Shown: positions 31,958-64,000, counted from the stretch's first letter. The stretch is DNA of 64,000 bases from Bugula neritina (GCA_964035545.1 OZ037765.1:33789504-33853503), one strand, 5' to 3'. The notes: generated by a model not told the origin, from the letters alone. Numbers and translations: made by a program.

Positions 31958-34900
31958 TCATTCTGAACTTTGCTGTCCATTGAACTTGGGGAAAAAGAAA
32001 AGTTTTCGAAAGTGGGTTAAAGTGCATTCTGGGCGGTTAGGTACGTTACAGCCAACTCTTGTGTTCCTTTTCTTTTGGAAGTACGAGATACTGACTGTTC
32101 TCACCCTGTCTTGTATCTGTGAATAATTTATAGTAACGGGAACTATATGAAGCTGTAAGTGTATTAAATTTGTTTCTCCATCAAGTATTGGATGAGCTTG
32201 AAGACTATTAGCAAATCAATGAAGCTGCAAACATCTAATAGAAATATTCAGGGAAAAGATATCTTTTAGAAACTAAAACTAATTACTAGATGTTTAAACT
32301 GAACTTATTTTTCTACTAGTTTATTGAATATCATACAGTATACACAGTGGATGAGCTAAAGTCAATTTTACAAACAAATAGATTATAAGAGCGACAGCAC
32401 TTACTATTTTGAACAGTTCATCTATATCTCTGTGACAGCTGTGTTTGTAGAATATAGCCACTAGTATTCTGATAAACCAGGTACCATACTTAAGGTGTCT
32501 GCCTGTCGTGTAGTCTGCAACAGGAAAGATAAATACAATATTCAAAGTACTATACTCAAAGTACTATACTCAAAGTATCGTACTCAAAGTGTCATACTCA
32601 AAGTGTCATACTCAAAGTATCATACTCAAAGTATCATACTCAAAGTATCATACTCAAAGTGTCATACTCAAAATATCATACTCAAAGTGTCATACTCAAA
32701 GTGTCATACTCAAAGTATCATACTCAAAGTACTATACTCAAAGTATCATACTCAAAGTATCATACTCAAAGTATCATACTCAAAGTATCATACTCAAAGT
32801 GTCATACTCAAAGTATCATACTCAAAGTATCATACTCAAAGTGTCATACTCAAAGTATTATACTCAAAGTATCATACTCAAAGTGTCATACTCAAAGTGT
32901 CATACTCAAAGTGTCATACTCAAAGTATCATACTCAAAGCAATCTTCCACAAAATAGATTATAATACTTCCTACATACTCTCTGTACTTGGCTTCACAAT
33001 GTAGAAGTCATCAGCATCTAGGTGAGTGAATCTATCAAAGTGAATATTTGGAGACGCATGTTGACCTGCAGGAGACTCAATCCCAGCTGTTGCTGAAGAT
33101 GAGGGTAACGGGTCGGTAGTTGGTGGTGAGATGGTGGCTGAACTTTGTGACTGTACAGCATTCCCAGGATCCACAGCAGCTAAAATTCAAAGGAGCAAAT
33201 TTTTGCCAGATTTCCCTGTTACACTATTTACAAGGAGTTCCTGGACATATACCGATTTAGAGAAAGAGCAGACATGTTTTTGTATAATTCCTAGTGGCTG
33301 CTGCAAAGTGATGCAGGTAAGTATAAGTTGATATTCTCATTTAGTAGTCATATTGCATGTGGTAATAAGAATCAATGACTACAAAGGTTTCACCAATAGC
33401 ATGATATAAAACTGTTATTGTCAAGGCTAACTATGGATGGGATATATACATTGTGATAAAACTGTCAAAGCTAAGTCACTCACTGCCAGAACAAGCCTGA
33501 AGAATGATGAGTTTGGGTTTTCCTCTCATGGCAGGGAATTTACTAGCAGAGAGTAAATCTTTGACGACTGACAAGTTGACAGGTTTAAGGTATTTGTCAT
33601 GGAAGATGTTTCCAGAAGTTCCGTGTGACATGATGACTAGAATGAACATGTCCAGATGCTGGTGGTCTCTGTGGGTGGTCTCTTTCCTCACTTCTGATAA
33701 TATTTCCTGTATAAATTATCTCAGGAATATTTTTATCAATCATTGATTTATGTTGCCTATTTTACACATGTCTTCCTTTGAAATGTGAAAAGAGTTATGA
33801 TTTTAGGTTGACCTATATCAACGAATATATATAGTTAGTTCATATACAAAAATAATGAAATACTCACTTCTCTGGTCAAATCAAACCACGGCCTCTCTCC
33901 TCCGGCAATAACAAACCCCATATCTTTGAACAAGGTACTAATGTTCTCGTAGTCAATACCAGAACCATGTCGGGTCATCCCAGTTATTTCACCTCCACTA
34001 TCTCGATAGAATCGTCCGTTGTTTATGATCATGGCGCGTCCTCTAACAGGGTCACTCATTTTGTACACCTGTAATCACAAATTTATTGCCATCTTTTAAG
34101 TATCACACAAAACTTTTTCAATAATGTTTAATAGCAATTCTTATGGAAGGATAACTAAATATGAATGACTATGTAAGTAATAAAAATAGTTAACAATAGT
34201 AGAAGTGTCTCACCTTTCTCTGCTCATTGAAAAGCTGCGTAATTTCCTTATTAGTTGTGGGCTTCAGTTTCATACCATTCATGTGAGCAATCAGAGGTTG
34301 AAGGTCACTTTGAGTAAAGTCAGCATATCCTTCCTCTTCCACATCAGAACATTCACTGATGTCATCATCTTCACATGAGGTTGAGACAGGCTGAGCAAAG
34401 CGCATCTTTTTTGCTGGTACTTCTAGTTCTAGAAAACAATACTCTCTGATGATAACATCTTGGAAGTAAAATGGTTCTGTAAATCGTGTAAGTGTTTGAA
34501 ACACAAAATAATTTTCGATGATATATTATCTCAGTATTGAATAATTAAATAATATCCTGTGACAGCTTATGCCAACTAAAACCATATATTATTGAGCTAG
34601 CACAGATTTATTGAATTGATCAGAACAGAAATTATGCAACTCCAGGGGGAACACTATTTAGGACTTATAGCAGTTAAAAATCTACTTGTGTTTATTGTAT
34701 AGTAATTGATGAGAAACCTTCAATGAGTGTGATATTGTTATCACAGTTCTCAAGTAAGGTAAAACTTGTTGGTTTATTACATTGCATTATGAATTAATAC
34801 GTGATTTACACAGCTAAAATATTTATAATGATTATATTGGAATAAAATATATTATACATATATATTACAGTTAATAAATAAGGATTACACTGTCTTCTAA

Positions 34901-37900
34901 TTATTATAATTTACATACCAGGAACACAGGATGCAATAAAAATCTCACCAGTTTTCAAAAGTTCAGCAACAAACTTCTTCAAATTTTCAGCTTCTTCCTT
35001 AGCCAATGACTCACCTATTGACACCAGATTAAATCAATGTGTATGAGACATTTAGAGAGGAGTAGATTATTGGAAAAACATTATAATAAACTCAGACGGA
35101 AACATAGACTCACATGGGTAGAGTAGAGCACTTGGGATCTCCTCACCATCACACAGAGTTGTTGAAGATCCACTACACAGTCTGGGACTTGGTCTGGGAT
35201 GTTTCAAGGTACGAAGACACCACGGAGGATTCAGCACTTTCTTAGGGCAAGGAAGTCCTAGCAGAAGGCAGTGAGCACAGTAGCATGTAGTGACTGGTCT
35301 AGTTGCTGTCCAAGTTTCTAGAATATGTTTAAGGATGTTGTTGTTGGTGGTGACGAGTCTCTCCCACATTCTGCTAATGTTGGCAGCATTAGATGACACG
35401 TAGAGTAACACCTTTCTAGATTTGTAGTCGTGTACCAGCTGTGTGTAGATTCCATCTTGATAGACATTGGCTCCGTTTTTCTTCACTTTCATCACAGCAA
35501 ACTCATCCGGAAACAGCTCTAGCAAGCCAACCGTCATTTGCTGGTAGACGTAGTGTGGCAGAGCGAGGCCATTGAACTGTGTTTCAACTTGAAGGAGCAG
35601 GTTTTGTGAGTGAGAGTAGGAAGTGCTGTAAGAACTTTTGGCAAACTGTGGGACAACAAAACATGGCTTTCCAGAGTTGACATGTACAGGACCATACAAC
35701 AACCGGAATGTCTGGAGCAAGCAGATAGCAACTTCAACATTCTCAGAACTGTGAAATATTGTTTTATTTTGAATCAAATAGACAAGAAGAGATTGCATCA
35801 TCAAGCCAGTGTCTGTGAAATGAGTAACAGATTCCTCAATGTCCTGCTTCTGAACAGGCATCCCATCCTCTGAATAGCACGGCCTAAACTTGTCATTTCT
35901 ACTCTGCCATACGTTAGGATCATGATGATACAAGACACAGAGAAGTTTGGTAACTTCTGAAATCTTGTGGAATATGTATGGCCGGAGAGAGCTGATCTCT
36001 TTATACCACAAGACTTTGCCGCAGTCATGCATGTATGTGAGGATTATGTCCAGCTGACGTGACTCAATTTGTTGAAGTTCGGTTCGCACGTATTTCAGTA
36101 TCTCATCAAAGGTACTGTACACAGAGGGGATAGATAGCACCTTTTCATTCACTTCTTCCCAAACCAAAGGTAAAGATTTCACAAAATGTTGACTGCTTTG
36201 AAGAAGGGACTCCTTGATCAGGTCAAACACTTCATACTTATCATCTTTCCCCACCTCATAAATGTCCTCACCAAGAAAGACTCTTCCAGTTGACTCACTG
36301 AAATGTTTGATTTGAGCAAAATCTCCACCCAATGCTTTCTCTTCCCTAATCATCTCCTCACACAGCTGATTGGAAGTTTCTAGAAAGTTCTTTTGGAGTT
36401 TCTGAAATTCCGCATTTTGAAACTTATCTTTATGTGTGAAGATAAGTTTTAGAGCACCCAGAGTTGGGTTAGCCAGATAGAGGTGAGACATGTAATCAAA
36501 GGCTAATCTTCTAACAGCTTCTCTGTGTGTTGATTTACTTGAAATCTCATCATACTGTTCCATGTTGACTACTATGACTGGAATGCAGTTCTGTCTCAGT
36601 GTCAGTTGATAAGTAATATGGTAGACCTCCTGGCCTCCCATATCAATGACACAGAGTACTGTACCATCCACCTCCACTTCTTCAACATTAAACACCTTTG
36701 TTGTCTCATCTCTCACAGCATCTGGCCCTCTGTTGGTCAGAACTCTCTTTCTGTCAGCATTCTGTAATGTTCTGATTAGACTGGTTTTTCCAGCCATCGT
36801 ATTACCCAGCACAGCTATAGTAGCAAATGGTAGACTTCTACCAGCACCTTTAGCCAAATCTGTGTAGTATTGTCTCACAGCACCTACTCCTCTCTCACAT
36901 ACTTCTGGTGGAGGAGATGTGAGAGCATTACAATAATCTACATTCAGTGTACGAAGTCGAGTTAGCTGTAGTATCTCAGGATCTAAGGATGTCATGGAGG
37001 AATTGAAGGATATATCCAGTTCCTGCAGTCTACTCAGTGTGTACACAGGAGATGGTAAACTGGTGAACTTATTTGATGATATGCCCAGTTTCTCTAACTT
37101 CTGTAGACTCTGCATGCTGTTAAATAACATACATAATAGGATATATAATAAGGAATATGACACATATAACATACACACTGTAGAAGAGAGTGCACATAGA
37201 TAATCAAATGATATAGTATTATACATGCTTTTCTTATTTGACATCAGCTTTTCTGACAAATACTTCAGTGCATGCAGGAAGTACTTCAAGTTACTTGGTT
37301 GACTGTCAGGTCAAGGTGGACAATTACTGCTAATTCCTTCTATTTAAACATTTTTCTATATTATCTAAAAGATTTTCATCTCATGGAGAAAAAACTATTG
37401 AAGACAGCTTTCACAGCCTAGTTGGCAACCTCAGAAATCATTACTAGGTTCCATGCAATTATTTTTGAACAGAACTTATAGCAGCTAGTATAATTGGATA
37501 TCAATTTCTGCAGATGTATACTTTATGCAGTAATTAGCTCATTTTCCTTGTTGAGGGATAATTCTTAATGGGGTGAACTTGCTAATAGGTCCATCATATT
37601 AATAGATAACAAAAGCCTAACCCCTTGTTCACACATTGCCGCATCGTAAACCGTAACAGCACAAACAAAATGGCGCCACTGTTACATTTTGTCAACGGGT
37701 GTTCACACATTGACGCAAAGTACAACGCTTGACGCTGAATTGTGACCAATCATAATGAGGTTAATTTTTGTCTGCAGTGACTTGGATATTATTTACAAAT
37801 TATTCGAAACATTCTTATCAAAAGATGTTATATAAATGATATTGACTAGATAAAAGGAAGTACACATGAAAAGAATCTCTCTTTTAAACATATTTGTTTT

Positions 37901-40900
37901 TAAAATAATTGTGCAAACTAATTCAAATAACGAATATTTAAGCTGTCCAAATCATTTCTAAGTGTTTGGTTTACGTGATTTTGTGATTAGAGAAAGCTAT
38001 ATTTTTAAGCTGATTTTAATTCAAACAAGCCGGATAAAAATTTTTTAATCTTTTAAAACTTTTGAATTAGTTGAATTAAATCAAAAATAAGCTATTAAAA
38101 TAAACTAGCGAAAACGTCCTTTAAATTTTAGTACCGTATCAACTCTACCCAATGGGAGCCCGCTGTGATTTTTCGAATAGAGCACTGCTTGATCAACGCA
38201 GCAGCGTATACTAGGGTACAATTCAGCCCGGATGTTAACAAAGATGGCGGATATTTGCTGTTACGGCGTACGGTGCGGCAATGTGTGAACAGGGGGTTAC
38301 TCCCCTGATGACACATTGTAATACAGTGGCCTATTGAATTGAATAGATAACAGGAGCCTTAAAGTGATGATGTAACTAAGGGTAGTGTGTGTGACATTTG
38401 CATGAACTGTTCTGGTAAATATCACACATAATAGAAAGTTGAATAAATATTTAAAAAGATGGCAGGAAACAAAATATCAGTATATCTATTCCGCTACAGG
38501 ACTTCATATAAAATATATAGTATATTGTCATCTGGCGAAAGTTATATGACTTCACTGTATCTTCTGTGATCATAATATAACATGCATGTCTTAGCAATCA
38601 CTGCCTTTTATCTTAACTGTGCATACTGTAGATAGTCAATGTATATCTATGCTAGCCTGCAGCTGACACAATCCAGCTATACATACTAACATAAGTTAGC
38701 TGAATGTACCACCTAAATAATAGCAGCACGTGGTACATGCAAGACAGCTCAGTCAATCAACACTCAACAACAACCAGTAGAGTTGAGTCACCACACAATA
38801 CAAAGTTACACCTTCTACTGATAGCTGGTCTAAGATCAGATAGCTGTGAGATAATAGACTTATATCCTTAGAGTAAACAGGTATTAGTACTGTACACACA
38901 GTAAGCTACAAACTCTGTAGCTGTCAACCAATAGAAATATCATCTCCTTAACCAATGAAAATGCAAAAAACAACTGAACAAACTGAACTGAGCAGCCTGC
39001 TGTTATAATCTAGTAAATCGACACTAAATACTAGCTAGTAGTATGAATAGTCACTAAATACTAGCTAACAGTATGAATAGTCACTAAATACTAGCTAGCA
39101 GTATGAATAGTCACTAAATACTAGCTAGCAGTATGAATAGTCACTAAATACTAGCTAGCAGTATGAATAGTCACTAAATACTAGCTAGCAGTATGAATAG
39201 TCACTAAATACTAGCTAGCAGTATGAATAGTCACTAAATACTAGCTAGCAGTATGAATAGTCACTAAATACTAGCTAGCAGTATGAATAGTCACTAAATA
39301 CTAGCTAGCAGTATGAATAGGTGGGAGTACTCTGTGTAGTGTGTATTCCTCTCACTTGCTTACCATGAGATATTATATTTATTACAGTATTATTCTACAC
39401 TATTATATAATACACACCTGTTTGGTAAAGTTGGCAGTTTACAGTCATTCATGTTCAACACTCTCAATGATTGTAAGGATGTGAATATATTGTCAAGTAG
39501 ACCTTTAGATAGCTTATTCTCTGATATATCCAATACCTCAAGATTCTCCAGTGAAGGTATGCTGTAACATAACATACAGGTATAAATACATTCTGTGAAG
39601 TTATAGAGTACAACTTACACGAGGATTAGTGTTATACGATTGTGTGCCAGTGTGGCTAGAGGAAAGAGAAGACAACACTATTGATAATAGTGAAGACTAT
39701 TTATATATTAGTACTCAATTTTACAGGTCAATACTTTATACCAGCTAAACATGGGATAATCATAGACTGAGTGAGCATTGATTAAGTTGGAAGTGATAAG
39801 TGAAGGTGTTGAATAAGTTGCAACTTCAACAGACTATCCCCAACTTGAGTGTTAACTGTAGAATCCTTTGCTATGTATGCAGACAGTTGCTGAGTTACTG
39901 ATGAGATATTATATATATTACAGTATTATTCTACACTATAATATAATACACACCTGTTTGGCAGAGTTGACAGTTTACAGCGTCTCATGTTCAACTCTCT
40001 CAATGATAGTAAGGATGTGAATATATTGTCAGGTAGATCTTCAGATAGGATATTCCCTGACATATTCAATACCTCAAGATTCTTCAGTGAAGATATGCTG
40101 TAACATAACATACAGGTATAGAAACACTCTGTAGCTCATACATACAAAGTGTGATAACAGAGTTTTAGAATATTATTATGACTCTGTATTTCTACCATCT
40201 AACCTCTAGACAACCTTGGGCATAGCAGTTGTATTATGAGTAACTATGAGGGGATAACTACTATGATGAAGAAGTAGAAAGCTCACGTTATATATAACCT
40301 AGGAACTAGTAAATCATAGACTGAGAATAAACGTAGTCAGGTAGCAGTGACTGAAAGAGTAATTAGTAAAAGTTTGAATGAGTTTTGTTTGAGCTGCAGA
40401 GTTCCTATGGCAGAGGCGGACAGAGGGCTCCATAGGGCCACTTGTGACCCTTTGCCCATTTTTCAGTGGCCCTTTTAATGCTTAAGATAAGTAAAAACTG
40501 CCATTGTTATTTTGATTAGCAGAGCAGATGTTTGGTGACAAATTACTTTATTATAATAAAGTTTATTATGTGTACAATCATGTGGCCCTTCATTTTGGCT
40601 GACCTCTGAACTTGGCCCTCGAGCAAAATAAGTTGCCCACTGCTTATGATAGGACAGTAGTATGAGAGACAGTTTAGGTTAGATTAGAGAAAAGATAACT
40701 CTAATAAACATAGAAAGTAGTTTACTATATTATATCCTAAATAGAGGGGTTTCAAACATCCCTCTAGAGGAATTTGTATTTTAAAGTTGTCTCCCCCTAA
40801 AGGTATTGGGGGCAGTCTTCATAATATATAGAAGGCCCATAAAATAAGTAGAAATGTAAGGTTTGAGTGAAGACTACTACTAGTATAAGCTTCATTTTTT

Positions 40901-43670
40901 CTGAGATTAATATTTTGGCATAAGTACACATATGAGCAGTTTCAAAAAATTTTTAAAATTTTTTGTTAATGATAAATGGCACAAAAACAAAACTTCAAAT
41001 CATATTTGTGGTTTTGGTTATTGAGCAAATCTGAAGCTGGCAGCTGTCGCATTATTATTTGCTTTGTTGACTGTAACCAGTCTGTTTAGAGCTGCTAACC
41101 TTTCAACTCTTAGAACAATAATAACACGCTCGTACACTATATAGCTGCACTAGTGGGCTCTGTCTTACTGAACTCCAAATGCTCCAAATTATGGGTTGGA
41201 ACACATGCCTGTACGTTTATGAAGGCACTGGCTCATTTGTATTAACATGTTCACGTATACTTACACACCTATACTATGAAAATAACTAAGCCACCCTACT
41301 ATCTAATATTTCTATATATCAAAAAAATTATTATAAATATAAAGATATGTATTAAAATAGATAGATTAAATTTGTAATTTCAAACAACATCTTATCTAAA
41401 AATGCTAAACACTGTATAACTATATATATGTTTTAAAAGCATTTGTTTTCATGGCATGCCTGCAAGTCAATGAAAATATTTAGAGAACAGTAAAAAGAAG
41501 CATATAAATTTCCGAATAGTTTCTTTTTTTCTGAGATAAATATTTTGGAAATGTCCCACAATCCAACGTTTAAATTGAGTCTGTAAAAGAAATTTCACAG
41601 TGTATTTTCAATAAATAATTATTCTTGCAAGCTGTTAGTATACCAACATTACTAATACAGAAATGTTTTTGGAGCTGCAGAGTCCCTATATGGCAGGGGT
41701 GGGCAACTGGGCCCCCTAGGGCCACTTGTGGCCCTTTGCCAATTTTTCAGTGACCCTTTTAATGCTTAAGAGAAGCAACAACTGTCATTTTTATTCTGAT
41801 TAGCAGAGCATAGGTTTGGTGACAAATTACTTTATTATAATAAAGTTTATTATGTGTACAATCTTGTGGCCCTTTTTCTGGCTGACTTCTGATTTTGGCC
41901 CTTGTGCAAAAAGAGTTGCCCACTCCTGCCCAATGACATGACTGTAGTATGAGAGACAGTGCAGGTTAGATTATAGGAAATATAACTCTAATAAACATAG
42001 AAAGTAGTTTAATATATTATATCCTAAATACTAGCAAACTGTAGCCTGAGCACTGAATGAGTTGAAAGGCCAGTTAGCTCGTGTTTTAATGTCATTTTGA
42101 ATATTCTTGACTCTAGAGCAATAGCGGACAATGATCTTCAACCTGAGTGTAAAAATGTAGCGAGTACATTATAATACAACAACTACTTATTGGTAAAACT
42201 CTGAATAAGTTCAAGTCTCAACAGACCATCCTCACTTGAGTGTTAACTGTAGAAACCTTTGCTATGTATGCAGACAGTTGCTGATGAGATATTATATATA
42301 TATTACAGTATCATTCTACACTATAATATAATACACACCTGTTTGGTAGAGTTTGGAGTCTACAGTACCCCATCTTCAACTCTCTCAATGACAGTAAGGA
42401 TGTGAATATATTCTCAGGTAGACCTTCAGATAGGTTATTATGTGGTATATCCAATACCTCAAGATTCTTCAGTGAAGATATGCTGTAACCGCTGTAACAT
42501 AACACACAGGTATAGAAACACTCTGTAGCTCATACATACAAAGTATGAAAGCAGAGTTTTAAAATATTTTTATAACTCTGTATTTCTACCATCTAACCTA
42601 TAGACAACCTGCTGTTATAATATAATAGTCACTAAATACTAGCTAACAGTATGAATAGTCACTATATATTAGCTAGCAGTATGAATAGTCACTAAATACT
42701 AGTTAGCAGTATGAATAGTCACTAAATACTAGCTAGTAGTATGAATAGTCACTAAATACTAGCTAGTAGTATGAATAGTCACTAAATACTAGCTAGCAGT
42801 ATGAATAGTTATTAAATACTAACTAGCAGTATGAATAGTCACTAAATACTAGCTAGCAGTATGAATAGTTACTAAATACTAGCTAACAGTATGAATAGTC
42901 ACTAAATACTAGTTAGCAGTATGAATAGTCACTAAATACTAGCTAGTAGTATGAATAGTCACTAAATACTAGCTAGTAGTATGAATAGTCACTAAATACT
43001 AGCTAGCAGTATGAATAGTTATTAAATACTAACTAGCAGTATGAATAGTCACTAAATACTAGCTAGCAGTATGAATAGTTACTAAATACTAGCTAGCAGT
43101 ATGAATAGTCACTAAATACTAGCTAGTAGTATGAATAGTCACTAAATACTAGCTAGTAGTATGAATAGTCACTAAATACTAGCTAGTAGTATGAATAGTC
43201 ACTAAATACTAGCTAGCAGTATGAATAGTTATTAAATACTAACTAGCAGTATGAATAGTCACTAAATACTAGCTAGCAGTATGAATAGTTACTAAATACT
43301 AGCTAGCAGTATGAATAGTCACTAAATACTAGCTAGCAGTATGAATATAGTCACTAAATACTAGCTAGCAGTATGAACAGTCACTAAATACTAGCCGGTA
43401 GCATGAATAGGTGAGAGCACTCTGTGTAGTACATATTCCTCTCACTTGTTTATAATATTTTATTGGCAGCATATTTACATATTATATTTATTACAGTATC
43501 ATTCTATACTATAATATAATACACACCTGTTTGGTAGAGTTGACAGTTTACAGTTCCACATGTACAACTCTCTCAATGATAGTAAGGATGTGAATATATT
43601 GTCAGGTAGACCTTCAGATAGGATATTCCCTGATATACTCAATACCTCAAGATTCTTCAGTGAAGATATG
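31958..43670 (-). CDS. LRR-Roc-COR (ROCO) protein with C-terminal caspase domain, paralog A; start exon not found
   Basis: LRR exons 43527-43670, 42339-42482, 39954-40097, 39418-39561; exon 35114-37116 (LRRs, G1 GNTMAGKTS, G3 DMGGQ, G4 THKD, COR); linker exons about 34919/34949-35014 and about 34214-34430; caspase exons 33868-34068 (YKMSDPVRGRAMIINN..RHGS), 33482-33706 (IMSHG, GKPKLIILQACSG), about 32978-33179, about 32405-32514 (GRHLKYGTWFI), about 31958-32116 (TLTHFRKLFFFP). Phases are compatible. Confidence 0.88.
32542..32940. repeat. 14-bp minisatellite (CATACTCAAAGTAT)
   Basis: Tandem array inside a caspase-domain intron. Confidence 0.95.
37620..38297. mobile_element. MITE with TA target duplication
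   Basis: TIRs ACCCCTTGTTCACACATTGCCGCA / TGCGGCAATGTGTGAACAGGGGGT, flanked by TA on both sides. Confidence 0.75.
39020..39320. repeat. 30-bp minisatellite in LRR-cassette intron, copy 1
   Basis: Unit TAGTCACTAAATACTAGCTAGCAGTATGAA; same unit at 42626-43410. Confidence 0.95.
41694..41928. mobile_element. hAT-like MITE, with a degenerate duplicate at about 40410-40643
   Basis: Ends CAGGGGTGGGCAACT / AGTTGCCCACTCCTG; flanks are also duplicated (about 40390-40743 vs 41672-42030); no clean TSD. Confidence 0.6.
42626..43410. repeat. 30-bp minisatellite in LRR-cassette intron, copy 2
   Basis: Same unit as 39020-39320, in the same position relative to an LRR exon. Confidence 0.95.
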
Positions 43671-44225
43671 CTGTAACATAACATACAGGTATAGAAACAC
43701 TCTGTAGCTCATACATACAAAGTGTGATAACATAGTTTTATAATAATAATTATTATGACTCTGTATTTCTGCTGTCTAACCTCAAGACAACCTTGGGCAT
43801 AGCATTTTATGTTGTGTTAGTTGCAGTTATTATATCTATGCTGTAGAGGCTACACTCAGTTGAGGGCTAAAAACTACATCTTATATATATATACAGTATA
43901 TGACATCATACAGTTGCCATACATCATATGATTCATGCAGTAATAACCAACAACTCTATTGCCTTATGTAAACATTCAAAACATTACATAGCAGTTGCAT
44001 AATGAGAAACAATGAGGGGATAACTACTATGATGAAGAATTAGAAAACTCACTTGTGCCATTACTACCTGTGCCATTTTTACTGCGGTGCGATTTTTACC
44101 AGACACCGTATGCACTTTATTAACATACTCATACAGTTTCATTTTCTTGCTGAATATCGCTATGGGGGTGTTAAAGACCACACCATTATTTAGTCATGTT
44201 ACAGAAAGAACTTGGACTACTATAA

Positions 44226-47200
44226 GGGTCATTCCGTGTCAAATCAACCAAATTTCAGAAAGTCCCACGCCTTTGCGTCTCAGATTTTGTTCATATTTAC
44301 ACCAAATGGACCTACACATGTCTTGAGTGCTATTCTCAAATATTTCTGGCCTGGCACAAAAACTTTTTGAGAAATGAATATTTCCACGAACAAAGGTTGG
44401 GAAAAATTTTGAGGAAAATTTGCGATTTTTACTTTTAGACCAATTTGTAAACGCCCATATCTCCATTATTTTTCTAGACTGAGCCTTAAAATTTGGTGTG
44501 TGATTTGATTACACCTATCAATTTGCACTAGTAGTAACACATACTGCAGAATACTTTGTGTGCATATATGCTATGCTATTGAATATTGGCAATTTTTTAT
44601 GAATTTTGAAAAATTTCGAATATTTGCCACATCACAAAAGGCATTAATTTTTATTTTACTTCCATAAATTTTTATTCATAAATAGCTGATTATGGTTACT
44701 TTATACTCTTTAATTTGTGTAATTTTGAAAATAATATTTTCCGAGATATAGACACCCAAAGTGAAGAAAATGTGAAAATTCGCCCAACTTCACAAGGATG
44801 TAACCCGATGTTTGAATACAGTAAAATCTTTCAAACAAGTATTTTCTGTAACGTCATTTAGTGTATTTTGTAGATTCATAAATTTGGACGTCCTTATATT
44901 GTCCAAACTTGAAGCAAATCGCACGGAAAAATGGTATGCGTACGAAAATCGGCAAAATGCAATTTTTCAATGTAATATGTTGGGATCATACATTTTTATT
45001 ATTCATATTGTTCAAAATATCAAGTAGATACATATATGTTTCCTATATATGTCAAATCTACTGAAGATTACGATAAAATCTGATTTGTGTGTAATATCGT
45101 AAGAAAATTCTGCCGATCGGCATTATATGATATTCTCATTAGGTTTCAGAAAGCAATTGTTATCTGTGAGTGAATGGTATGAAACAGCTGAAATCTTGCT
45201 GTAATCAAGTACATTAAGTAGCTGAGGCAAGAGTAGCTTCAAAAAACATACCAAAATATAAAACCATGGCCCTGAACACAATAGATCTAATTTATTGCGG
45301 CTTTTGAAACAGATGTGCCTAAATATAGCAGATTGGTCCGCATCCTAATCAAGTTAGTAATTTGCCCAGGCTAAGAATAATTCATCATCCTGAAAAAAAT
45401 CTACAACTTTTTTTTTAAATGTGGAGAGAATGGTCTTCCAACTTTACCATCTGGTTCAAACAGAATTCCCTTTGCAGTTTTCTGGCTTGCTGGGCCAGGT
45501 AATTGTTTGCTCCAGATTCTATGGCTGTTCTATCGGTGGTCCAGCTTTTCGTGCTAATGTCAATAACTGGACCCTCTCTAGTCACAAGAAAACTTTCGCA
45601 TCCTTATTCAAGGATCAAGGATCATCAATTTGTTCAAATCTTTATGATTACTACGCTTCATACAGACATTTGTTACTTCTGGGTGGAGTTCTTCTTCATC
45701 TATGACAAAGACTGTTTCTACCTTTTCAGTAATGACCTCCTGCACTTTCTTTCGTTTTCTTTTCCTATAGCTCACTTTACTGGATGGGCTAATTTTTGCA
45801 ACTTTCAAGGAAGAAGCTCCCAATTCTGTCATTCCAGTGTTTAGTGTTTGTGCCTCCTTCTCAACTTTAAGAAATGCATCACTTTTAGTTTCCTGAGAGT
45901 ATTCTGAGAGCTCATCTTTTTTTAAAGCAATTAATATTGCACAGTTTCTCTCAGTTTCTACAGTTCAAAGGAATAGAATTATACTAGGAGAGCCCTAAAA
46001 TTTAGCCCTTCCAGTAAAGTGAACTATGGAAAAAAAACAAAATCAAGTGAAGGAGGTCATTGCTAAGAAGGTTTCCAAAGTTGCAAGTATAGAGGGAGAA
46101 GAGCTCCACCCAGAATCAACAAATGCCTGTATAAAGCCTAATAATCATAAAGATTTGAACATATTATTATGTTCCTTGAATAAGGTGAAAGTTTCTTTGG
46201 GACAAAAGAAGGTCCAGTTATTGACATTGGCACCAGAAAGGTGGACCATTGATAAGACCTCTATAAAATTTGGAGTAAACAATTATCGTTGTGTTTTAAG
46301 TTAGAGAAATAAATATTTATTATAGTAGCAGACTGAAAAAATAGCAACGTAAAAAAAGGTTATCTTTAGAGTTACCAGTTGCCAGTACAAGTGTGAAATG
46401 CAAGTCTGGATAAGAGAAAAACTGCTGGGTCTTTATAGTCGCTTAGTTAGCTTTTGTGTACTAGCTATAATGAAAATGGAAAAGCATAACAAGCTGAGAT
46501 GACATGTATTAGGAAAAAGCTTCCCCAGCTTATGTAAAAATCCAACAATTACCTTGCACAGCAAACCAGAAGACTGCAAAAGGAGTTCTGTCTGAACCAG
46601 ATATTAAAGTTGGAAGACCATTGCTTCCAGTTTTGAAAAAGAGAGTTGTAAATTTTTTCAGGATGATGAACATTGGACATGGCATGACGCCAATTACTTG
46701 ATTTTTTAACCAGTACTGACCAAATTAGGGCGAGGTTAGGGCCATTTTGCTATATTTAGGCACATCTGTTTCAAAAGCCACAATTATTTCCGGCATGTAT
46801 TAAACACCACTGTCATCGAATAAATTAGACCTATTGTGTTCAGGGCCATGGTTTTATATTTGGGTATGTTTTTTGAAGCTACTCTTGCCTCAGCTACTTA
46901 ATGTACTTGATTACAGCAAGATTTCAGCTGTTTCATACCATTCACTCACAGAAATAACAATTGCTATCTGAAACCTAATGGGAATATCATATAATGCCGA
47001 TCTGCAGAATTTTTCTTACGATATTACACACAAATCAGATTTTATCGTAATCTTCAGTAGATTTGACATATATAGGAAACATATATGTATCTACTTGATA
47101 TTTTGAACAATATGAATAATAAAAATGTATGATCCCAATATATTATATTGAAAAATTGCATTTTGCCGATTTTCGTACGCATACCATTTTTCCGTGCGAT

Positions 47201-47883
47201 TTACTTCAAGTTTGGACAATATAAGGACGTCCAAATTTATGAATCTACAAAATACACTAAATGACGTTACAGAAAATACTTGTTTGAAAGATTTTACTGT
47301 ATTCAAACATCGGGTTACATCCTTGTGAAGTTGGGCGAATTTTCACATTTTCTTCACTTTGGGTGTCTATATCTCGGAAAATATTATTTTCAAAATTACA
47401 CAAATTAAGGAGTATAAAGTAACCATAATCAACTATTTATGAATAAAAATTTATGGAAGTAAAATAAAAATTAATGCCTTTTGTGATGTGGCAAATATTC
47501 GAAATTTTTCAAAATTCATAAAAAATTGCCAATATTCAATGGCATAGCATATATGCACACAGAGTATTCTGCAGTATGTGTTACTACTAGTGCAAATTGA
47601 TAGGTGTTATCAAATCACACACCAAATTTTAAGGCTCAGTCTAGAAAAATAATGGAGATATGGGCGTTTACAAATTGGTCTAAAAGTAAAAATCGCAAAT
47701 TTTCCTCAAAATTTTTCCCAACCTTTGTTCGTGAAAATATTCATTTCTCAAAAAGTTTTTGTGCCAGGCCAGAAATATTTAAAAATAGCACTCAAGACAT
47801 GTGTAGGTCCATTTGGTGTAAATATGAACAAAATCTGAGACGCAAAGGCGTGGGCCATTGGTTGAGTTGACACGGAATGACCC
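44226..47883. mobile_element. Sola2-like DNA transposon, non-autonomous, TIRs over 1 kb
   Basis: Ends GGGTCATTCCGTGTCAA / TTGACACGGAATGACCC; 4-bp TSD ATAA; arms about 44226-45335 and 46750-47883; internal transposase-like remnants (KVQLLTLAPERWTIDK..FGV, FFQDDE) in both orientations. Confidence 0.78.
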
Positions 47884-50800
47884 ATAAATAACTAGAAACA
47901 AGCTACTCTGTCTACCAGAAGAAGAGATATATAATAGACCATGTAAAACTCAGCCAATCAGCAAAGTGTACCAGGTCAATGTTCTACCATTATAACTGAT
48001 ATAAAATTCTGCAAGTTCAATTGCAAAATGCATGCTTCTAAAAGCTAGTTGTGCAACTTTTTTTTCATGCATTATTTAATTTCATATCTTAAGTTGATGA
48101 CTCTTGAAACTATTTTTTAAAATGTCTAAATTAAGTGTTTATAAAATGCAATTAAAAATTGCATGTCTAAAAAATGACCTGGTACACTTTTGCAACTTAA
48201 GGCCAATTATTACATAACTGCCAGCTTAGTAGTTATTTGTTGTTGCAGCTTGAATGGGTTATTGTTTAGCATTGAAAGCTTGTAGCAAACATCTGTGAAT
48301 TTGGTACATGACTTTGATTGGCTGGTTTTTGAATGGCCCTTTAATATATGCATCTGGATGGCTGGGTAGTGTAGACTCCGCCTACATCTAGCTAATGTAC
48401 AGTAGCCAATCCACAGTAGTATTACAAAATTTCTGTTTAACAAATGAAATATTCTGGTCATTTGTTTTGTACTTTACAATAGTAAATATTCTATTCAACT
48501 GGAATTTTGTTGTATGTAAGCCATGGGAACTGCTAAGAGGTTAAATCAACCACCCATGCTGGTAATATTGTAGCTCGCAGTAATAGCAAGTCCACACCAT
48601 ATAAATATACACATCAGCTATTATGTGCAGCTTATGAATGCTGAAATGACCCCATTTTTTACCTTCAATTTGAAAAAATTGTATTACATATTCTGCCACT
48701 TCTGCACCAAGAATGTGTTTTCCTTTAAAATTTTGAAAATAGTAGTCAGTTTCTGCAGCAGTCAACTGCATCCACAATAAACAGCGTAAGCTTTCAAATA
48801 AACTATAAATATATGAAATATTAGTGTGGAAACAATGTAATTTATTTATTGCTATGATGAAAAATTACAAGAACATTATATAAAAGCTAGATATAGATTT
48901 CTATTAAAATGGCACAGGTAAAAATAACACATTTTTACTTCAAATTATAAATTTCATCAGTCACCAATGGTGGCTGTAGATTGCAGAGAGCACAGCAGAC
49001 TATCATAATCATAATCATTTGGGTTACCAACGCACTAAAGCATATAATGTAAGACGCACAAAAAACATTGGTTTTAATGAAACATGTAAAAGAAACGAAC
49101 AGAAAATGTTTTCAACAGAGTCAGCTGATATAGAGCAACAGAACTCATCTGACACCCATCCTCATAGTCAGACTTCATCAGAAGTAACTGAGTTACCAGA
49201 AACATCAACTACTCAGAAAAAAAGATCTGCACATTCTATTGATAGACGGAAATCAAAAGTTGGAAGAAAAAAGCAACTAATAAAAAAGTAAAAGTTTTTA
49301 AAACTTTCACTACTACAGATGAGCGAACTAAATTTCATACTGAAATACCTACACATTTTTTATACTTTTCTTTAGCAAGGTAAAAATTATTATTTTCTCA
49401 TTGCAAAGATATACTATGGTTTATTACAAATAAACAATGCAAGTCTCACTATGCTGAAATATGTACATTATTGATTAAGTTTGATGTGTATTAAAACTGT
49501 CATTTTAATTAAATTTGTTGCAGTGTGAGTGCATCATTCATACATTTTTTATTAAAAATTTTGTTTTATGTAAGAGATTCACAAATACCACAGTGGTCAT
49601 CTGTATGCTTTGACTTATTTAGTTCAGGGTTTTAATTAAACAAGCAGCAATCTTCTATTTGTGGACAAATTGACTCATTTTCTCCAGGAAAAGTAAATTG
49701 TTTTGACCTAAATTTTCCTTGGCTATTTTAAAGCTTATCAAAAATGGCCTCCTAATCTAATTATTAGCCGAAACTAACTTGGTGTTTAAAACTAAAATGG
49801 TTTACACTTGTTACTAGTTTCACTTACTCCCAAAATTATTAAATGCTATTCTAAAAATAATATGGGTTTGAATTAGTTATAGTATAATTATAAAATGAAG
49901 TAATTATTGTTTGTACACAGTATTTGTTTAAACTCATGACTTCATTCAAAGCATGTATTCATACAACTAGCTTATTATGTACTGTTACAGTATTACGTAA
50001 CACATGTTGACACACATTACATTCTGTTTGGATGGTGATATATTGGGTCAAGCCTTCAGCTAGCAGTTCTTGAACTTCATAGTTGTTGCAAAATATAACT
50101 GAAGCTACTTACCAGAGGGTAAAAACTGCTGAATGAATACAAACTAAGCACAAAATTTATTTAGCACATACATTATAATTTGAATCATAATTTAATTTTC
50201 TTTCTTTATTTACTATATTTAGATTTATATGTCCGAAGATGAAAGTTCTTACTCTCCGAAAAAAGTTAACAAGACAAGGTGAACTTTTATTGGCTTTGAT
50301 GAAGCTGCGTCAAGGTTTACAGTTTCAAATACTTGCTGACTTTTTTATATCTCTAGATTGCTAGCAAGCCAAACCTTCAAAGACACATTAGATATTTTAG
50401 CAAGAGAACTGAACAATCTAATATATTTTCCACCAAGAGAGAAGCTGAACATCCCTCTGAGCTTTCAAAGCCAATATGCTTACATTAGGTGCATTATAGA
50501 CTGCACAGAAATATATTCATTTGCAAGCCTCAATCAAAGCTGGCTCAATATTTAACATGGGGTGAGTATAAAAAGACCAACACCATCAAGTATTTGGTTG
50601 CAATTACACCCAGGGGCACTACCTGCTTTATTTCGCATGGAATGGGAGGTAGAGCCTCAGACAAGTGTGTAGTGAATGACTCTGGGTTCTTAGACTTCAT
50701 AAACCCAGGTGATGTGGTCATGGCAAATAGAGGCTTTCCTATTGAAGAAGAACTTATAGGCGCTGGAGCCAAGTTGGCCATACCACCTGGGAAAAGAGGC

Positions 50801-51111
50801 TATGGTGTGGTGGTTCGTGGAACTACCAGCAGCACAACATGTAGGGTCGCGTAATTGACCCGGAACAATGGATAGCCAATTAGCGTAGTTGATAGTTAGC
50901 AGCAATTGTAGTTTCCCGCTGCTAAGTCAGTCGAAGCTAGAGTGTGAAATAGATTAGATGTGTAACTTGTTTGGAAATAATGTATCGTTTTTGTAATGTA
51001 TAATTGTGTGTAAAATATACTCGTTCACTCGACTTATCCTGGTGCAGTTCTATAGTAAATAAATAGACTCTCTGGATAGCACATCAACCCTAAATCGGGA
51101 AATCATAACAG

Positions 51112-51129
51112 TGGTGGCAGCGGTGGGAT
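51112..51129 (+). promoter_or_regulatory. Primer binding site, tRNA-Leu
   Basis: TGGTGGCAGCGGTGGGAT is complementary to the 3' end of eukaryotic tRNA-Leu (...ATCCCACCGCTGCCACCA). Confidence 0.85.
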
Positions 51130-51141
51130 AGTGCATCCAAG

Positions 51142-52095
51142 ATGGAGACTGAAAATGCTGGAACTCAACCACCGGCAATCGAAGGTGAGCGTAGAGACAA
51201 TGCTGTAGAGACAATGCCTGTTAACCATGTAGTAGAAGAGCGAAGGGTTCCGCGAGAACTAGCTGAAGACCGCTACAGGTTAAAGGCGCCCACCTTCACG
51301 GGTGAAGAGGGGGTGGAACAATTTATCCAAGAGTTTAGCGACGTAATGGACGTCGCTCAGTGGCCCCCTAGGGTGGCCTTGCTGAAGCTTAGAATGGCAT
51401 TGATGGACAAAGCCAAGCCCTACGGGCTGGGTGTAGACATTGATAATATCTTTGCTTCTCTGCGGGCCCGCTTTGGCCTCTCTGCTACAGATGCCAGGGC
51501 CCGATTGCAGAGGTTGCGGCGTGATCCCCGCACCCCGCTGCGGGAGCATGCCGCCGCGGTCATGAAGCTGGCACAGATCGCGTACGGCGACTTGCCCCCA
51601 GTCAACCGCGAGAGGTACACCCTCGACGCTTTCATAGCATCTGTCGACGATCTGGGTCTCCACCACCAGTTTCTAGCTAGGGGAGTCACCACCGTTAAAG
51701 ATGCTCTGACTGAGGGGGAAGCTTACCTCCTAGCTAATCAAATGCATAAAAGTCGCGGAAGCTCCCGCCAAGTGGAGATAGACCGCGCAGACACGGCCGC
51801 GGGACAAGGGGAGGAAACCCCCGCCGCGGCTGCCGTGTCCCAGTTGGCGACGGCATCAAAAGTCACTCAACTGACGGACATGCTAGCCAAGCTGATAGCA
51901 ACACTGACACCACAAAACCCAGTGAGTACCGCCCCTGAGCCCATGCGGCCATCGGCGCCGCCACAGGGAGAAACAGTCAGTTTTTGCTGGGAGTGCGGAA
52001 ATCAAGGACATTTCCGCCGATATTGTCCCTTCCTAAATCAGGGGTTAAACTACCGCGGCCCGCAGATGTTCCCACCTTCCGCGGGCCGACGATGA
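51142..52095 (+). CDS. gag: Gypsy Gag
   Basis: 317-aa ORF after the PBS with a capsid-like region and CCHC knuckle CWECGNQGHFRRYC. Confidence 0.93.
   Translation: METENAGTQPPAIEGERRDNAVETMPVNHVVEERRVPRELAEDRYRLKAPTFTGEEGVEQFIQEFSDVMDVAQWPPRVALLKLRMALMDKAKPYGLGVDIDNIFASLRARFGLSATDARARLQRLRRDPRTPLREHAAAVMKLAQIAYGDLPPVNRERYTLDAFIASVDDLGLHHQFLARGVTTVKDALTEGEAYLLANQMHKSRGSSRQVEIDRADTAAGQGEETPAAAAVSQLATASKVTQLTDMLAKLIATLTPQNPVSTAPEPMRPSAPPQGETVSFCWECGNQGHFRRYCPFLNQGLNYRGPQMFPPSAGRR
52044..52088 (+). promoter_or_regulatory. -1 ribosomal frameshift signal
   Basis: G TTA AAC in the gag frame, 5-nt spacer, then hairpin CGGCCCGC...GCGGGCCG; pol lies in the -1 frame. Confidence 0.75.
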
Positions 52096-56615: not shown

Positions 56616-56920
56616 TTCAAACCATTTCACACATTCAGTATGTCTTACGACAACAGATCGTGGGGTGAGTTAACTATATCTTAATACGAAACTAGATCGC
56701 ATCGCTCAGCTCTGACTCACTGAGTCAATCGAGCTGGAGATAGGTTAGTGAAATACCGTAGTAAGAACTCTAGAGATTTTTATAATCTCATTGCAATACG
56801 TGTTCTATCTGACTATTCACTACCATTAATCTCTACGAGGTAACTGAATTAGGAGTTGCCAAGCTGCTCAAGCTGACAACACAGCAGTGTACTGTATTAA
56901 CACTGTTGAAACTTTTTCAG

Positions 56921-63400: not shown

Positions 63401-64000
63401 TTCGGTGACAATTTGCCCAACACTCATGCAAGAAGAATATAAAATTTTCAAGCCACCAGACATTGATGTAAGTAAACATACATGGGTATAAAAGTGCACT
63501 TGGAATCTCCTCATTGTTGCACAACGTCATTGAAGATCCGCTACACAGTCTGGTACCTGGTGTGAGATGTTTCATGGAACGAAGACACCACGGAGGATTC
63601 AGCACTTTCTTAGGACAAGGAAGTCCTAGCAGAAGGCAGTGAGCGCAGTAGCATGTAGTGACTGGTCTACTTGCTTTCCAAGTTTCTAGAACATGTCTAA
63701 GGATGTTGTTGTTGGTGGTGATGAGTCTCCCCCACATTCTGCTGATGTTGACAGCATTAGATGACACGTAGAGTGACACTTTTCTAGATTTGTAGTCGTG
63801 TACCAGCTGTGTGTAGATACCATCTTGATAGACATTGGCGCCATTTTTCTTCACTTTAACCACAGCAAATTCATCAGGAAAAGACTCCAACAAACCAACT
63901 GTCATTTGGTGGTAGACATAGTGTGGCAGGGCTAGACCATTGAATTTAGTTTCAACTCGAAGAAGCATATTCTTTGGCGAGGAGTAAGAGGTATCGAAGA
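60409..64000 (-). CDS. ROCO-caspase paralog B: COR C-terminus plus caspase; 5' part beyond the window
   Basis: Exons 63482->64000 (COR, very similar to paralog A), 63221-63313, 62908-63098, 62451-62621 (RGRALIINN..RKGS), 62037-62259 (IMTHG, GKPKVVILETCSG), 61218-61391, 61006-61115 (SKRHPVYGSLMI), 60409-60549 (TLTHMRKLYLFP..*); same intron positions as paralog A. Confidence 0.88.

What the first reader, a model, noticed from the sequence alone, without database searches (positions are those of the whole stretch)
39418..43670. Array of 144-nt symmetric LRR exon cassettes, variable at predicted ligand-facing positions
Seen: four exons of exactly 144 nt (48 aa, two LRRs), all phase 2-2, with near-identical flanking intron sequence. 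The framework is nearly constant but residues in and after the beta-strand vary: SISG/DIPH/NMSG/DISE in repeat 1 and YMWN/KMGY/NMRR/NMND in repeat 2. Known: these x positions form the concave binding face in VLRs and plant NLRs, and shuffled LRR exons are reported in brown-algal ROCO genes. Inference: a diversifying recognition module where skipping, duplication or swapping of any cassette keeps frame.
Basis: partly seen in the sequence, partly recalled or inferred. Interest (0 to 1): 0.85.

Follow-up and report, generated by a model that had tools for sequence, protein, structure and literature searches.

The report
Hypervariable LRR cassette exons, ROCO-caspase gene
Four interchangeable 144-base exons build the sensor arm of an animal LRR-GTPase-caspase gene, and across this large gene family their predicted ligand-contact codons change far faster than silent sites or nearby intron, as in fast-evolving immune receptors.

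Summary
Four minus-strand exons of exactly 144 nt (43527-43670, 42339-42482, 39954-40097, 39418-39561) have AG/GT borders and phase 2-2. Each encodes two leucine-rich repeats.

They feed a 2-kb exon encoding three more LRRs plus Roc-COR, then caspase exons. Named relatives with the same LRR-Roc-COR-caspase layout are RefSeq proteins of the bryozoan Watersipora.

The cassette has at least 186 candidate copies in the genome. I collected 46 intact ones:
- **Frame:** all start with C and end with AG, so any join gives a Ser codon.
- **Diversity:** no two share both contact blocks.
- **Selection:** at LRR x-positions chosen beforehand, dN/dS is 3.6-4.3, against about 1.1 in the framework. A site model gives omega of about 16 for about 21% of sites: 11, 14, 16, 20, 34, 36, 38, 39, 41.
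- **Homogenised scaffold:** cassette dS is 0.06, against 0.31-0.36 for most paralog pairs in the Roc-COR exon.
- **Turnover:** paralogs carry 3-9 cassettes, and two recent duplicates differ by cassette gain or loss.

The best reading is a germline repertoire of candidate immune or allorecognition receptors. It parallels brown-algal ROCO genes, with a two-repeat cassette and a caspase effector.

Limits: the window copy lacks the family's first exon, and no RNA evidence could be obtained, so splicing choice is untested. Earlier notes of this scan describe the same family on other DNA of this genome.

The parts
43527..43670 (-). LRR cassette 1, the most 5' in the gene. It is 144 nt, phase 2-2, and encodes two LRRs. 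Contact residues are S.SG and Y.WN.
   Evidence: AG/GT borders and open frame; 100% self-match in the genome search.
42339..42482 (-). LRR cassette 2 (D.PH / K.GY). A second AG lies 9 nt upstream of the acceptor, at 42492-42493. If used it would add 9 nt and keep the frame.
   Evidence: acceptor context TACAGCGGTTACAG is unique among the 46.
39954..40097 (-). LRR cassette 3 (N.SG / N.RR).
39418..39561 (-). LRR cassette 4, the last before the Roc exon (D.SE / N.ND).
42627..43409 (.). 30-nt minisatellite (about 26 units) in the intron between cassettes 1 and 2.
   Evidence: All 15 arrays of this unit in the 264 kb studied lie in LRR-array introns or between exon 1 and the first cassette.
39019..39319 (.). 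The same 30-nt minisatellite (about 10 units) in the intron between cassette 4 and the Roc exon.
40380..42030 (.). Intron between cassettes 2 and 3 (2241 nt). It carries two copies, about 92% alike, of a short interspersed element (40425-40743 and 41709-42030).
   Evidence: families D3, D4; intron lengths.
35118..37116 (-). Large exon with three further LRRs, a Roc GTPase (GNTMAGKT, DMGGQ, THKD) and COR. The acceptor is aacag|C, in the same phase as the cassettes. The 3' end is not fixed; the homology to relatives runs to about 35100-35220.
   Evidence: (Roc 29.6 bits, cutoff 27; LRR_4, LRR_8).
31982..34071 (-). Caspase (Peptidase_C14) region in four exon-sized matches: 33868-34071, 33485-33709 (contains SHG and QACSG), 32402-32557 and 31982-32116.
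   Evidence: Peptidase_C14, E = 3e-12; tblastn with Watersipora proteins.
43671..44221 (-). Intron remnant upstream of cassette 1, alike to the corresponding stretch of paralogs D and E. Beyond it there is no family exon 1. An insertion of about 3.7 kb with inverted ends spans 44222-47885.
   Evidence: inverted ORF pairs.

Best explanation
The four exons are the modular sensor arm of one member of a large, clustered, germline-encoded family of single-chain LRR-Roc-COR-caspase genes in what is probably a bryozoan.

Each cassette encodes two LRRs on an almost invariant scaffold. The cassettes share splice-site-proximal intron sequence and a symmetric phase, with AG|C at every junction. Unequal crossing-over, likely helped by the intronic 30-nt minisatellite, can therefore add, remove or move a cassette without breaking the frame.

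Exchange among cassettes keeps the scaffold and its silent sites homogeneous. Selection, possibly together with patchy conversion from the pool of more than 180 cassettes, keeps the beta-strand and post-strand x-positions different in every cassette. Each gene thus displays a unique concave surface.

Inferred, not shown: the LRR arm binds a variable ligand (microbial or allogeneic), binding acts through the Roc-COR GTPase switch, and the fused caspase is the output. This would work like an NLR or inflammasome but with a ROCO switch.

The window copy has intact cassette, Roc-COR and caspase reading frames but lacks the family's first exon. It may be a 5'-truncated member.
For: **Anatomy**
- Exact 144-nt AG/GT exons in phase 2-2.
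- The Roc exon acceptor is in the same phase.
- Pfam finds LRR, Roc and Peptidase_C14.
- Caspase exons were mapped with Watersipora proteins.

**Family**
- At least 186 first-look cassette candidates, clustered on C1 at 33.83-34.97 Mb.
- Six genes in 264 kb carry 4, 5, 5, 3+1, 9 and 3 cassettes.
- Exon 1 has 57 matches genome-wide.
- Watersipora RefSeq proteins of 1413-1419 aa have the LRR-Roc-COR-caspase layout.

**Diversification**
- Amino-acid entropy peaks at positions 14, 38, 39, 36, 11, 41 and 16.
- Nucleotide diversity is 0.5-0.7 at the first and second bases of those codons, against about 0.05 in the framework and 0.08-0.09 in proximal intron.
- dN/dS is 3.6 and 4.3 (N = 189, S = 9, p = 8e-8) at the a-priori x-positions. 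The framework gives 1.1.
- The synonymous rate at the x-codons is not clearly raised (1.47 against 1.09 per site). That argues against a mutation hot spot.
- M2a gives omega of about 16-23 for 21-28% of sites.
- There are 37 distinct LRR1 blocks and 43 distinct LRR2 blocks among 46 cassettes, and no pair shares both.
- Twenty independent cassette ORFs from a public metagenome vary at the same positions (rho = 0.75).

**Homogenised scaffold**
- Cassette dS is 0.06. Roc-COR dS is 0.31-0.36 for most paralog pairs, with omega of about 0.25.

**Recent turnover**
- In the collinear arrays of A and B (Roc-COR dS 0.048), x-codons differ at 32/144 nt, against 8/432 in the rest of the exon. One pair has 7/36 against a 200/200 identical upstream intron.

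**Structure**
- The cassette profile matches canonical LRRs of RSU1, VLR and TLR4.
- An AlphaFold model of one cassette puts strands at 9-13 and 34-38, so the variable positions lie in and just after the strands.
Against: - Splicing of these exons is therefore inferred from splice signals, phase and the Watersipora gene models.
- The window copy has no recognisable exon 1 between the array and the next gene.
- No ligand, GTPase or caspase activity is known for any member.
- The dN/dS methods assume a tree, but cassettes clearly exchange sequence, which inflates site-model tests. The M1a/M2a code is my own, with fixed relative branch lengths.
- Copies were collected by similarity to the window exons, which favours a uniform scaffold.
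- The COR-A Pfam match is below threshold (16.6 bits, cutoff 35.3).
- The single-cassette model is only moderately confident (pLDDT 71), and side-chain direction was not measured.
Confidence: 0.75

Rival explanations
1. Relaxed constraint only. The variable positions are simply the least constrained, solvent-exposed LRR residues and drift neutrally, with no selection for diversity.
For: x-positions are the most variable in any LRR protein (established knowledge). Framework omega is about 1.1, so constraint on the recent cassettes is weak overall.
Against: Neutral drift cannot exceed the silent rate. Here non-synonymous change at x-codons is 4-5 times the synonymous rate. It is about 8 times the flanking-intron divergence in A/B positional orthologs. 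First and second codon positions are near saturation while adjacent third positions and intron stay at about 0.05-0.1.
Confidence: 0.03
2. Transcript-level mix and match. The symmetric cassettes are mainly a substrate for regulated exon skipping or alternative inclusion, so one gene yields many receptor isoforms, as reported for brown-algal ROCO genes and, in another form, Dscam.
For: Every junction keeps the frame. Cassette 2 has a tandem in-frame acceptor. Brown-algal ROCO genes with phase-2 LRR exons show multiple splice variants (PMC11378527).
Against: There are no RNA data here. All acceptors and donors are strong and nearly identical, which gives no hint of regulated choice. The germline diversity among more than 180 cassettes already explains the repertoire. 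This reading is not exclusive of the best explanation.
Confidence: 0.15
3. Somatic DNA-level diversification. Cassettes would be copied into an expressed gene by gene conversion, as in lamprey VLRs, or the contact codons would be targets of directed hypermutation.
For: The scaffold is constant while the contact codons are hypervariable. Multi-nucleotide codon replacements sit next to unchanged flanks (for example a 3-of-3 change at codon 39 in one A/B pair). A large pool of cassettes lies nearby.
Against: All 46 cassettes have AG/GT sites and sit in ordered intron-exon arrays. Within the contiguous 264 kb these arrays belong to genes with Roc exons and, in five of six genes, their own exon 1. 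No orphan, splice-less cassettes were seen in those 264 kb. The silent rate at the variable codons is not clearly raised, and third positions vary least. The differences are fixed in one germline assembly.
Confidence: 0.03
4. The window copy itself is a decaying, 5'-truncated pseudogene. Its four cassettes would be a relic of the family process rather than a working module.
For: Exon 1 is found upstream of A, B, C, D and E and at 57 places genome-wide, but not between cassette 1 and the next gene. The upstream region is full of mobile elements. Neighbours C (truncated Roc exon) and D (frame break at the start of the Roc exon) show that family members do decay.
Against: All four cassettes, the 666-codon Roc-COR exon and the caspase exons are open. 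The catalytic motifs (P-loop, SHG, QACSG) are intact. Roc-COR omega against paralogs is 0.24-0.42. An unrecognised alternative first exon cannot be excluded.
Confidence: 0.3

Closest known systems
Brown-algal LRR-ROCO genes with shuffled LRR exons (Ectocarpus, Saccharina; Zambounis et al. 2012, PMC3341825; Teng et al. 2024, PMC11378527)
   Same: An LRR arm sits N-terminal to Roc-COR. Repeats are encoded by equal-length phase-2 exons. Genes are clustered with birth and death. Exon number varies between paralogs. Positive selection acts on a few positions of the concave face.
   Different: This is an animal lineage, so almost certainly an independent origin. The cassette is 144 nt and two LRRs rather than 72 nt and one. 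The scaffold and silent sites are strongly homogenised. A caspase is fused at the C-terminus. Alternative splicing is reported in the algae but is untested here.
MFHAS1/MASL1-type animal ROCO proteins (the name RefSeq gives the Watersipora relatives)
   Same: LRR-Roc-COR order. The Roc exon matches Watersipora proteins annotated as MFHAS1 homologs at 33-39% identity.
   Different: This family has a C-terminal caspase, a massive lineage-specific expansion, and cassette-built hypervariable LRRs. The MFHAS1 label is an automatic annotation and was not tested for orthology here.
Lamprey and hagfish variable lymphocyte receptors (VLR)
   Same: LRR modules have a constant scaffold and hypervariable residues in and after the beta-strand. 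The cassette profile hits VLR structures.
   Different: VLR genes are assembled somatically from splice-less flanking cassettes. Here every cassette is a normal exon of a germline gene. There is also no stalk or membrane anchor, and the fused signalling domains suggest an intracellular protein.
Plant NLR and animal NLR/inflammasome receptors
   Same: An LRR sensor under diversifying selection at xxLxLxx positions, a nucleotide-dependent switch, and a cell-death or protease output. Genes are clustered with sequence exchange.
   Different: The switch is a Roc-COR GTPase, not an NB-ARC or NACHT STAND ATPase. The caspase is in the same chain rather than recruited through CARD or PYD adaptors.

Membership tests
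ROCO proteins | Roc (Ras-of-complex) GTPase domain with P-loop, DxxG and N/TKxD motifs | tested here: met
   Pfam Roc at 29.6 bits against cutoff 27. GNTMAGKT, DMGGQ and THKD are read in the translation.
ROCO proteins | COR domain directly after Roc | tested here: inconclusive
   COR-A scores 16.6 bits, below the cutoff of 35.3. However, the whole exon aligns end to end with relatives that carry precomputed COR hits.
Brown-algal type shuffled-exon LRR-ROCO | Each LRR on its own 72-bp phase-2 exon | tested here: not met
   Exons are 144 nt with two LRRs each. The phase is 2, as in the algae (PMC11378527).
Brown-algal type shuffled-exon LRR-ROCO | Positive selection on concave-face positions of the repeat exons | tested here: met
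   dN/dS is 3.6-4.3 at x-positions. The site model picks 11, 14, 16, 34, 36, 38, 39 and 41, plus 20.
Brown-algal type shuffled-exon LRR-ROCO | Alternative splicing of the LRR exons | not testable with these tools
Only genomic read-through ORFs were found in protein databases.
VLR-type somatically assembled LRR receptors | Incomplete germline gene flanked by splice-less donor cassettes | tested here: not met
   All 46 cassettes have AG/GT and lie in ordered arrays. In the contiguous 264 kb these arrays sit in genes with Roc and caspase exons, and five of the six genes have exon 1.
Caspases (Peptidase_C14) | Catalytic His (SHG) and Cys (QACxG) in a C14 fold | tested here: met
   Peptidase_C14 at E = 3.4e-12. 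SHG and QACSG are read in exon 33485-33709. The p10-like part lies at 32402-32557.
STAND NLRs | NACHT or NB-ARC ATPase between the effector domain and the LRR | tested here: not met
   Pfam finds no NACHT or NB-ARC match, only Roc-type GTPase hits.
Dscam-like mutually exclusive exon arrays | Exactly one exon of a tandem array included per transcript | not tested
   There are no RNA data. Watersipora gene models carry many consecutive LRRs, which argues for joint inclusion.

The most novel reading that the evidence does not exclude
The cassette arrays may be used combinatorially within an individual. Regulated skipping or choice of the frame-neutral cassettes, or somatic exchange among them, would give each zooid or cell its own set of LRR-Roc-COR-caspase receptors. 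That would be an anticipatory or allorecognition repertoire in a colonial invertebrate built on a ROCO switch.
Probability: 0.12. Interest if true: 0.92.

Novelty: new variant of a known kind. Interest (0 to 1): 0.72.

Why it matters
Bryozoans are colonial animals whose immune and allorecognition genes are essentially unknown. Here a ROCO GTPase, a protein class whose natural inputs are still unclear (it includes LRRK2 and MFHAS1), carries a sensor arm with the sequence signature seen in fast-evolving recognition receptors, fused directly to a caspase.

If this holds, three things follow:
- ROCO proteins gain a testable role as receptors.
- There is a one-chain alternative to the NLR-adaptor-caspase design.
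- It is a second, independent case, after brown algae, of phase-2 LRR exon cassettes driving receptor diversity.

The very uniform scaffold with about nine variable positions per cassette is also a natural analogue of engineered repeat-protein binders.

Tried and rejected
- **RNA evidence.** After that, no letters of the stretch went to a search tool, only local scripts.
- **Whole-cluster download.** The sample is therefore 46 cassettes, not all 186 or more.
- **Spliced fragments in protein databases.** A search with one cassette ORF found only 29 genomic read-through ORFs from a JGI metagenome and no exon-exon junctions.
- **Exon 1 for the window gene.** tblastn and blastn with five paralog exon-1 sequences, and a whole-genome search, found none in the window.
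- **Intron flanks as a neutral yardstick over 90 nt.** Indels and minisatellites ruin the alignment there. I used proximal flanks and A/B collinear introns instead. One of the four A/B pairs has poorly aligned introns.
- **Readings rejected.** A mutation hot spot, because the silent rate at the variable codons is not clearly raised. VLR-like assembly, because every cassette has splice sites. Assembly artefact, because an independent metagenome shows the same pattern.
- Exons were handled one by one by reference, and the fold is of a single cassette.


Full report
**1. What is in the sequence**

The window is AT-rich eukaryotic DNA, about 29-57% GC in 2-kb windows. On the minus strand there are four exons of exactly 144 nt: 43527-43670, 42339-42482, 39954-40097 and 39418-39561. 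Each is bordered by AG and GT. Each is open only in the frame that leaves one base at the 5' end and two at the 3' end, which is phase 2 on both sides.

Each exon encodes 47 whole codons. These form two leucine-rich repeats of the LxxLxLxx(N/C)xL type.

A 270-nt unit of exon plus proximal intron recurs four times at 71-94% identity. The introns between the cassettes are 1044, 2241 and 392 nt. They hold a 30-nt minisatellite (42627-43409, and again at 39019-39319) and two copies of a short interspersed element.

**2. The gene they belong to**

Downstream on the same strand, an acceptor (aacag|C) in the same phase opens a 2-kb exon running from 37116 to about 35118. It encodes three more LRRs and a Roc GTPase, then a COR-like region. 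The Roc match scores 29.6 bits against a cutoff of 27, and the motifs GNTMAGKT, DMGGQ and THKD are present. The COR-A match is below threshold.

Further downstream there are caspase exons: 33868-34071, 33485-33709 (with SHG and QACSG), 32402-32557 and 31982-32116.

An exhaustive profile-free search with the Roc-COR exon found mostly unnamed metagenome ORFs. It also found full-length RefSeq proteins of the bryozoan Watersipora subatra, 1413 and 1419 aa long (33-35% identity; other Watersipora relatives reach 39%). Pfam scans of these give many LRRs, a weak COR-A match in one of them, and a complete C-terminal caspase; their central regions align end to end with the window's Roc-COR exon. The single-chain LRR-Roc-COR-caspase layout is therefore a conserved gene type, and the genome is probably a bryozoan's.

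Exons were used one at a time, by reference.

**3. The family**

The window lies at C1:33,789,504-33,853,503 of a 216-Mb assembly. The cassette with its flanks has at least 186 first-look candidates. The 40 that were scored are all on C1 between 33.83 and 34.97 Mb, at 88-100% identity.

It holds six genes on the minus strand:

| Gene | Cassettes | Note |
|---|---|---|
| W (the window gene) | 4 | No exon 1 found |
| A | 5 | |
| B | 5 | |
| C | 3+1 | Roc exon truncated |
| D | 9 | Frame break at the start of the Roc exon |
| E | 3 | |

With seven further loci, I collected 46 intact cassettes. Every one is 144 nt with AG/GT borders and an open frame. One more copy carries an in-frame 15-nt deletion.

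All 46 begin with C and end with AG. The family's first exon is 57 codons long, starts MKNDTT and ends AG|gt. The Roc exon starts with C. Any combination of cassettes therefore recreates an AGC serine codon at the junction.

Exon 1 lies upstream of A, B, C, D and E and has 57 matches genome-wide. None lies between cassette 1 of W and the next gene. That interval instead holds:
- an insertion of about 3.7 kb with inverted ends;
- a Harbinger-type transposase fragment;
- a Ty3/gypsy-type LTR element.

The window copy may therefore be 5'-truncated, although all its known coding exons are open.

**4. Where the variation sits**

Across the 46 cassettes, eleven or more positions are invariant. Amino-acid entropy peaks at peptide positions 14 (12 residues seen), 38 (12), 39 (10), 36 (7), 11 (6), 41 (6) and 16 (5). 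In motif terms these are positions 5, 8 and 10 of the first repeat and 5, 7, 8 and 10 of the second.

Nucleotide diversity at the first and second bases of these codons is 0.5-0.7, where the maximum is 0.75. It is about 0.05 in the rest of the exon and 0.08-0.09 in the proximal intron.

A profile of the cassettes aligns to canonical LRRs of RSU1, VLRs and TLR4. An AlphaFold model of a single cassette (pLDDT 71, moderate) places beta-strands at 9-13 and 34-38. The variable residues therefore lie in and just after the strands. Established LRR structural knowledge assigns these to the concave face. Side-chain direction was not measured here.

**5. Is it more than relaxed constraint?**

Before looking at the rates, I fixed an a-priori class: motif positions 2, 3, 5, 7, 8 and 10 of both repeats, which is 12 codons.

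| Test | x-positions | Framework | Whole exon |
|---|---|---|---|
| Pairwise Nei-Gojobori dN/dS | 3.6 | 1.1 | 2.1 |
| Parsimony counting on a tree | 4.3 (189 non-synonymous, 9 synonymous changes; binomial p = 8e-8) | 1.16 (not significant) | 2.3 |

A tree built without the x-codons gives the same result.

The synonymous rate at the x-codons is not clearly raised (1.47 against 1.09 per site), and third positions vary least. This argues against a local mutation hot spot.

My own implementation of the M1a/M2a site models used F3x4 frequencies and relative branch lengths fixed from a nucleotide tree. It gives LRT 443 and 722 on the two trees. Omega is about 16-23 for 21-28% of sites. Posterior probability exceeds 0.95 at sites 11, 14, 16, 20, 34, 36, 38, 39 and 41. 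Eight of these nine are in the a-priori class.

Exchange among cassettes violates the single-tree assumption and inflates such tests, so I also made a tree-free check. Genes A and B are recent duplicates (Roc-COR dS 0.048) with collinear cassette arrays in which each has one cassette the other lacks. In the four positional pairs:
- the x-codons differ at 32 of 144 nt;
- the rest of the exon differs at 8 of 432 nt;
- the flanking intron differs at 96 of 1355 nt, or about 2.5% in the three cleanly aligned pairs.

One pair has 7 of 36 x-codon differences beside a 200/200 identical upstream intron. Another has 9 changes in five x-codons and none elsewhere in the exon.

The diversification is real.

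**6. Homogenised scaffold, unique surfaces**

Between most paralog pairs, the Roc-COR exon has dS of 0.31-0.36 and omega of about 0.25, which is ordinary purifying selection. The cassettes, whichever genes they come from, have dS of only 0.06. Either the cassette scaffold is kept uniform by exchange among arrays, or it was renewed after the genes separated.

At the same time there are 37 distinct first-repeat contact blocks and 43 distinct second-repeat blocks among the 46 cassettes. Pairs that share one block never share the other (0 share both, 14 share only the first, 3 share only the second).

Point mutation under very strong selection, and patchy conversion from the large cassette pool, would both give this picture. 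Conversion would leave no trace in an identical scaffold. Multi-nucleotide codon replacements, and shared local variants between neighbouring cassettes of gene B, hint at conversion. I could not separate the two.

Twenty cassette ORFs from a public metagenome that evidently contains DNA of a close relative show the same variable positions (Spearman 0.75). None is identical to the 46.

**7. Mechanism**

*Shown:*
- frame-neutral modular exons;
- gain and loss between recent duplicates;
- a uniform scaffold;
- accelerated amino-acid change at strand and post-strand positions;
- linkage to Roc-COR and a caspase with intact catalytic motifs.

*Inferred:*
- The LRR arm binds variable ligands.
- The GTPase acts as the switch.
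- The caspase is the output.

This would work like an NLR or inflammasome but is not a STAND protein. The 30-nt minisatellite occurs 15 times in the 264 kb, always inside the LRR arrays or between exon 1 and the first cassette. It is therefore a plausible substrate for unequal exchange.

Whether cells skip or choose cassettes is untested. After it I sent no more of that stretch to search tools.

**8. Comparison and novelty**

The closest described system is the brown-algal LRR-ROCO family. There the exons are 72 bp, phase 2, with one LRR each. The genes show exon shuffling, four positively selected concave positions and alternative splicing (PMC3341825 and PMC11378527).

The present case shares the principle but differs in several ways:
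- it is in an animal;
- it uses a two-repeat 144-nt cassette;
- it has a much more uniform scaffold;
- it carries a caspase.

Full-text searches for bryozoan or metazoan ROCO-caspase receptors found no description of it.

It fails the defining test for VLR-type assembly, because every cassette is a spliced exon of a germline gene.

Earlier notes of this same scan describe the same family on other pieces of this genome: 14- and 16-cassette genes, and an estimated 77-100 genes. My counts of 57 exon-1 matches and at least 186 cassettes of this subtype are compatible with them.

I rate it a new variant of a known kind.

Noticed in passing
window 50804-58291 (LTRs at 50804-51103 and 57992-58291): This is a Ty3/gypsy-type LTR retrotransposon. 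It has at least 300-nt LTRs that are 100% identical, a 1543-codon open pol (protease, RT, RNase H, integrase) and GC of about 56% against about 33% around it. It is inserted into a Harbinger-type DDE_Tnp_4 transposase ORF (50489-50854). I observed it only.
   Followed up: partly
window 43671-62000: The window gene has no copy of the family's first exon (57 codons, MKNDTT...). That exon lies 0.8-2.7 kb upstream of the first cassette in paralogs A-E and has 57 matches genome-wide.
   Followed up: yes
window 44222-47885: There is an insertion of about 3.7 kb relative to paralog D. Its ends carry inverted copies of the same ORFs (44239-44466 against 47604-47870; 44812-45027 against 47091-47306). 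It is probably a DNA transposon with long terminal inverted repeats.
   Followed up: partly
window 42483-42493: Cassette 2 has a duplicated acceptor (ttacag cggttacag). Use of the upstream AG would add 9 nt and keep the frame. It is the only one of the 46 cassettes with this feature.
   Followed up: no
window 62035-62244 and 63486-64000: The next family member (gene A) starts inside the window with a caspase exon and the 3' part of its Roc-COR exon. Its caspase exon is only 41% identical in protein to that of the window gene. Gene E's is 96% identical. The family therefore has at least two caspase types.
   Followed up: partly
G000:C1 33923777-33924046 (gene C) and 33968809-33968877 (gene D): Gene C keeps only 90 codons of the Roc exon. 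Gene D has a frame break with two stops in the first 23 codons of its Roc exon. These are signs of gene birth and death in the cluster.
   Followed up: partly
L025:267-395: One cassette is 129 nt, with an in-frame 15-nt deletion that removes five codons of the first repeat. Its AG/GT borders are intact.
   Followed up: no
window 39019-39319, 42627-43409 and 13 more arrays in C1 33.83-34.01 Mb: The 30-nt minisatellite occurs only inside the LRR arrays or between exon 1 and the first cassette of the six genes. Arrays range from 1 to 43 units.
   Followed up: partly
window, many places (e.g. 8052-8900, 18218-19400, 26100-26400, 32447-33023): The window is unusually rich in other minisatellites, with periods of 9-34 nt. 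One (32447-33023, period 14) lies in the intron between the caspase exon matches at 33485-33709 and 32402-32557.
   Followed up: no
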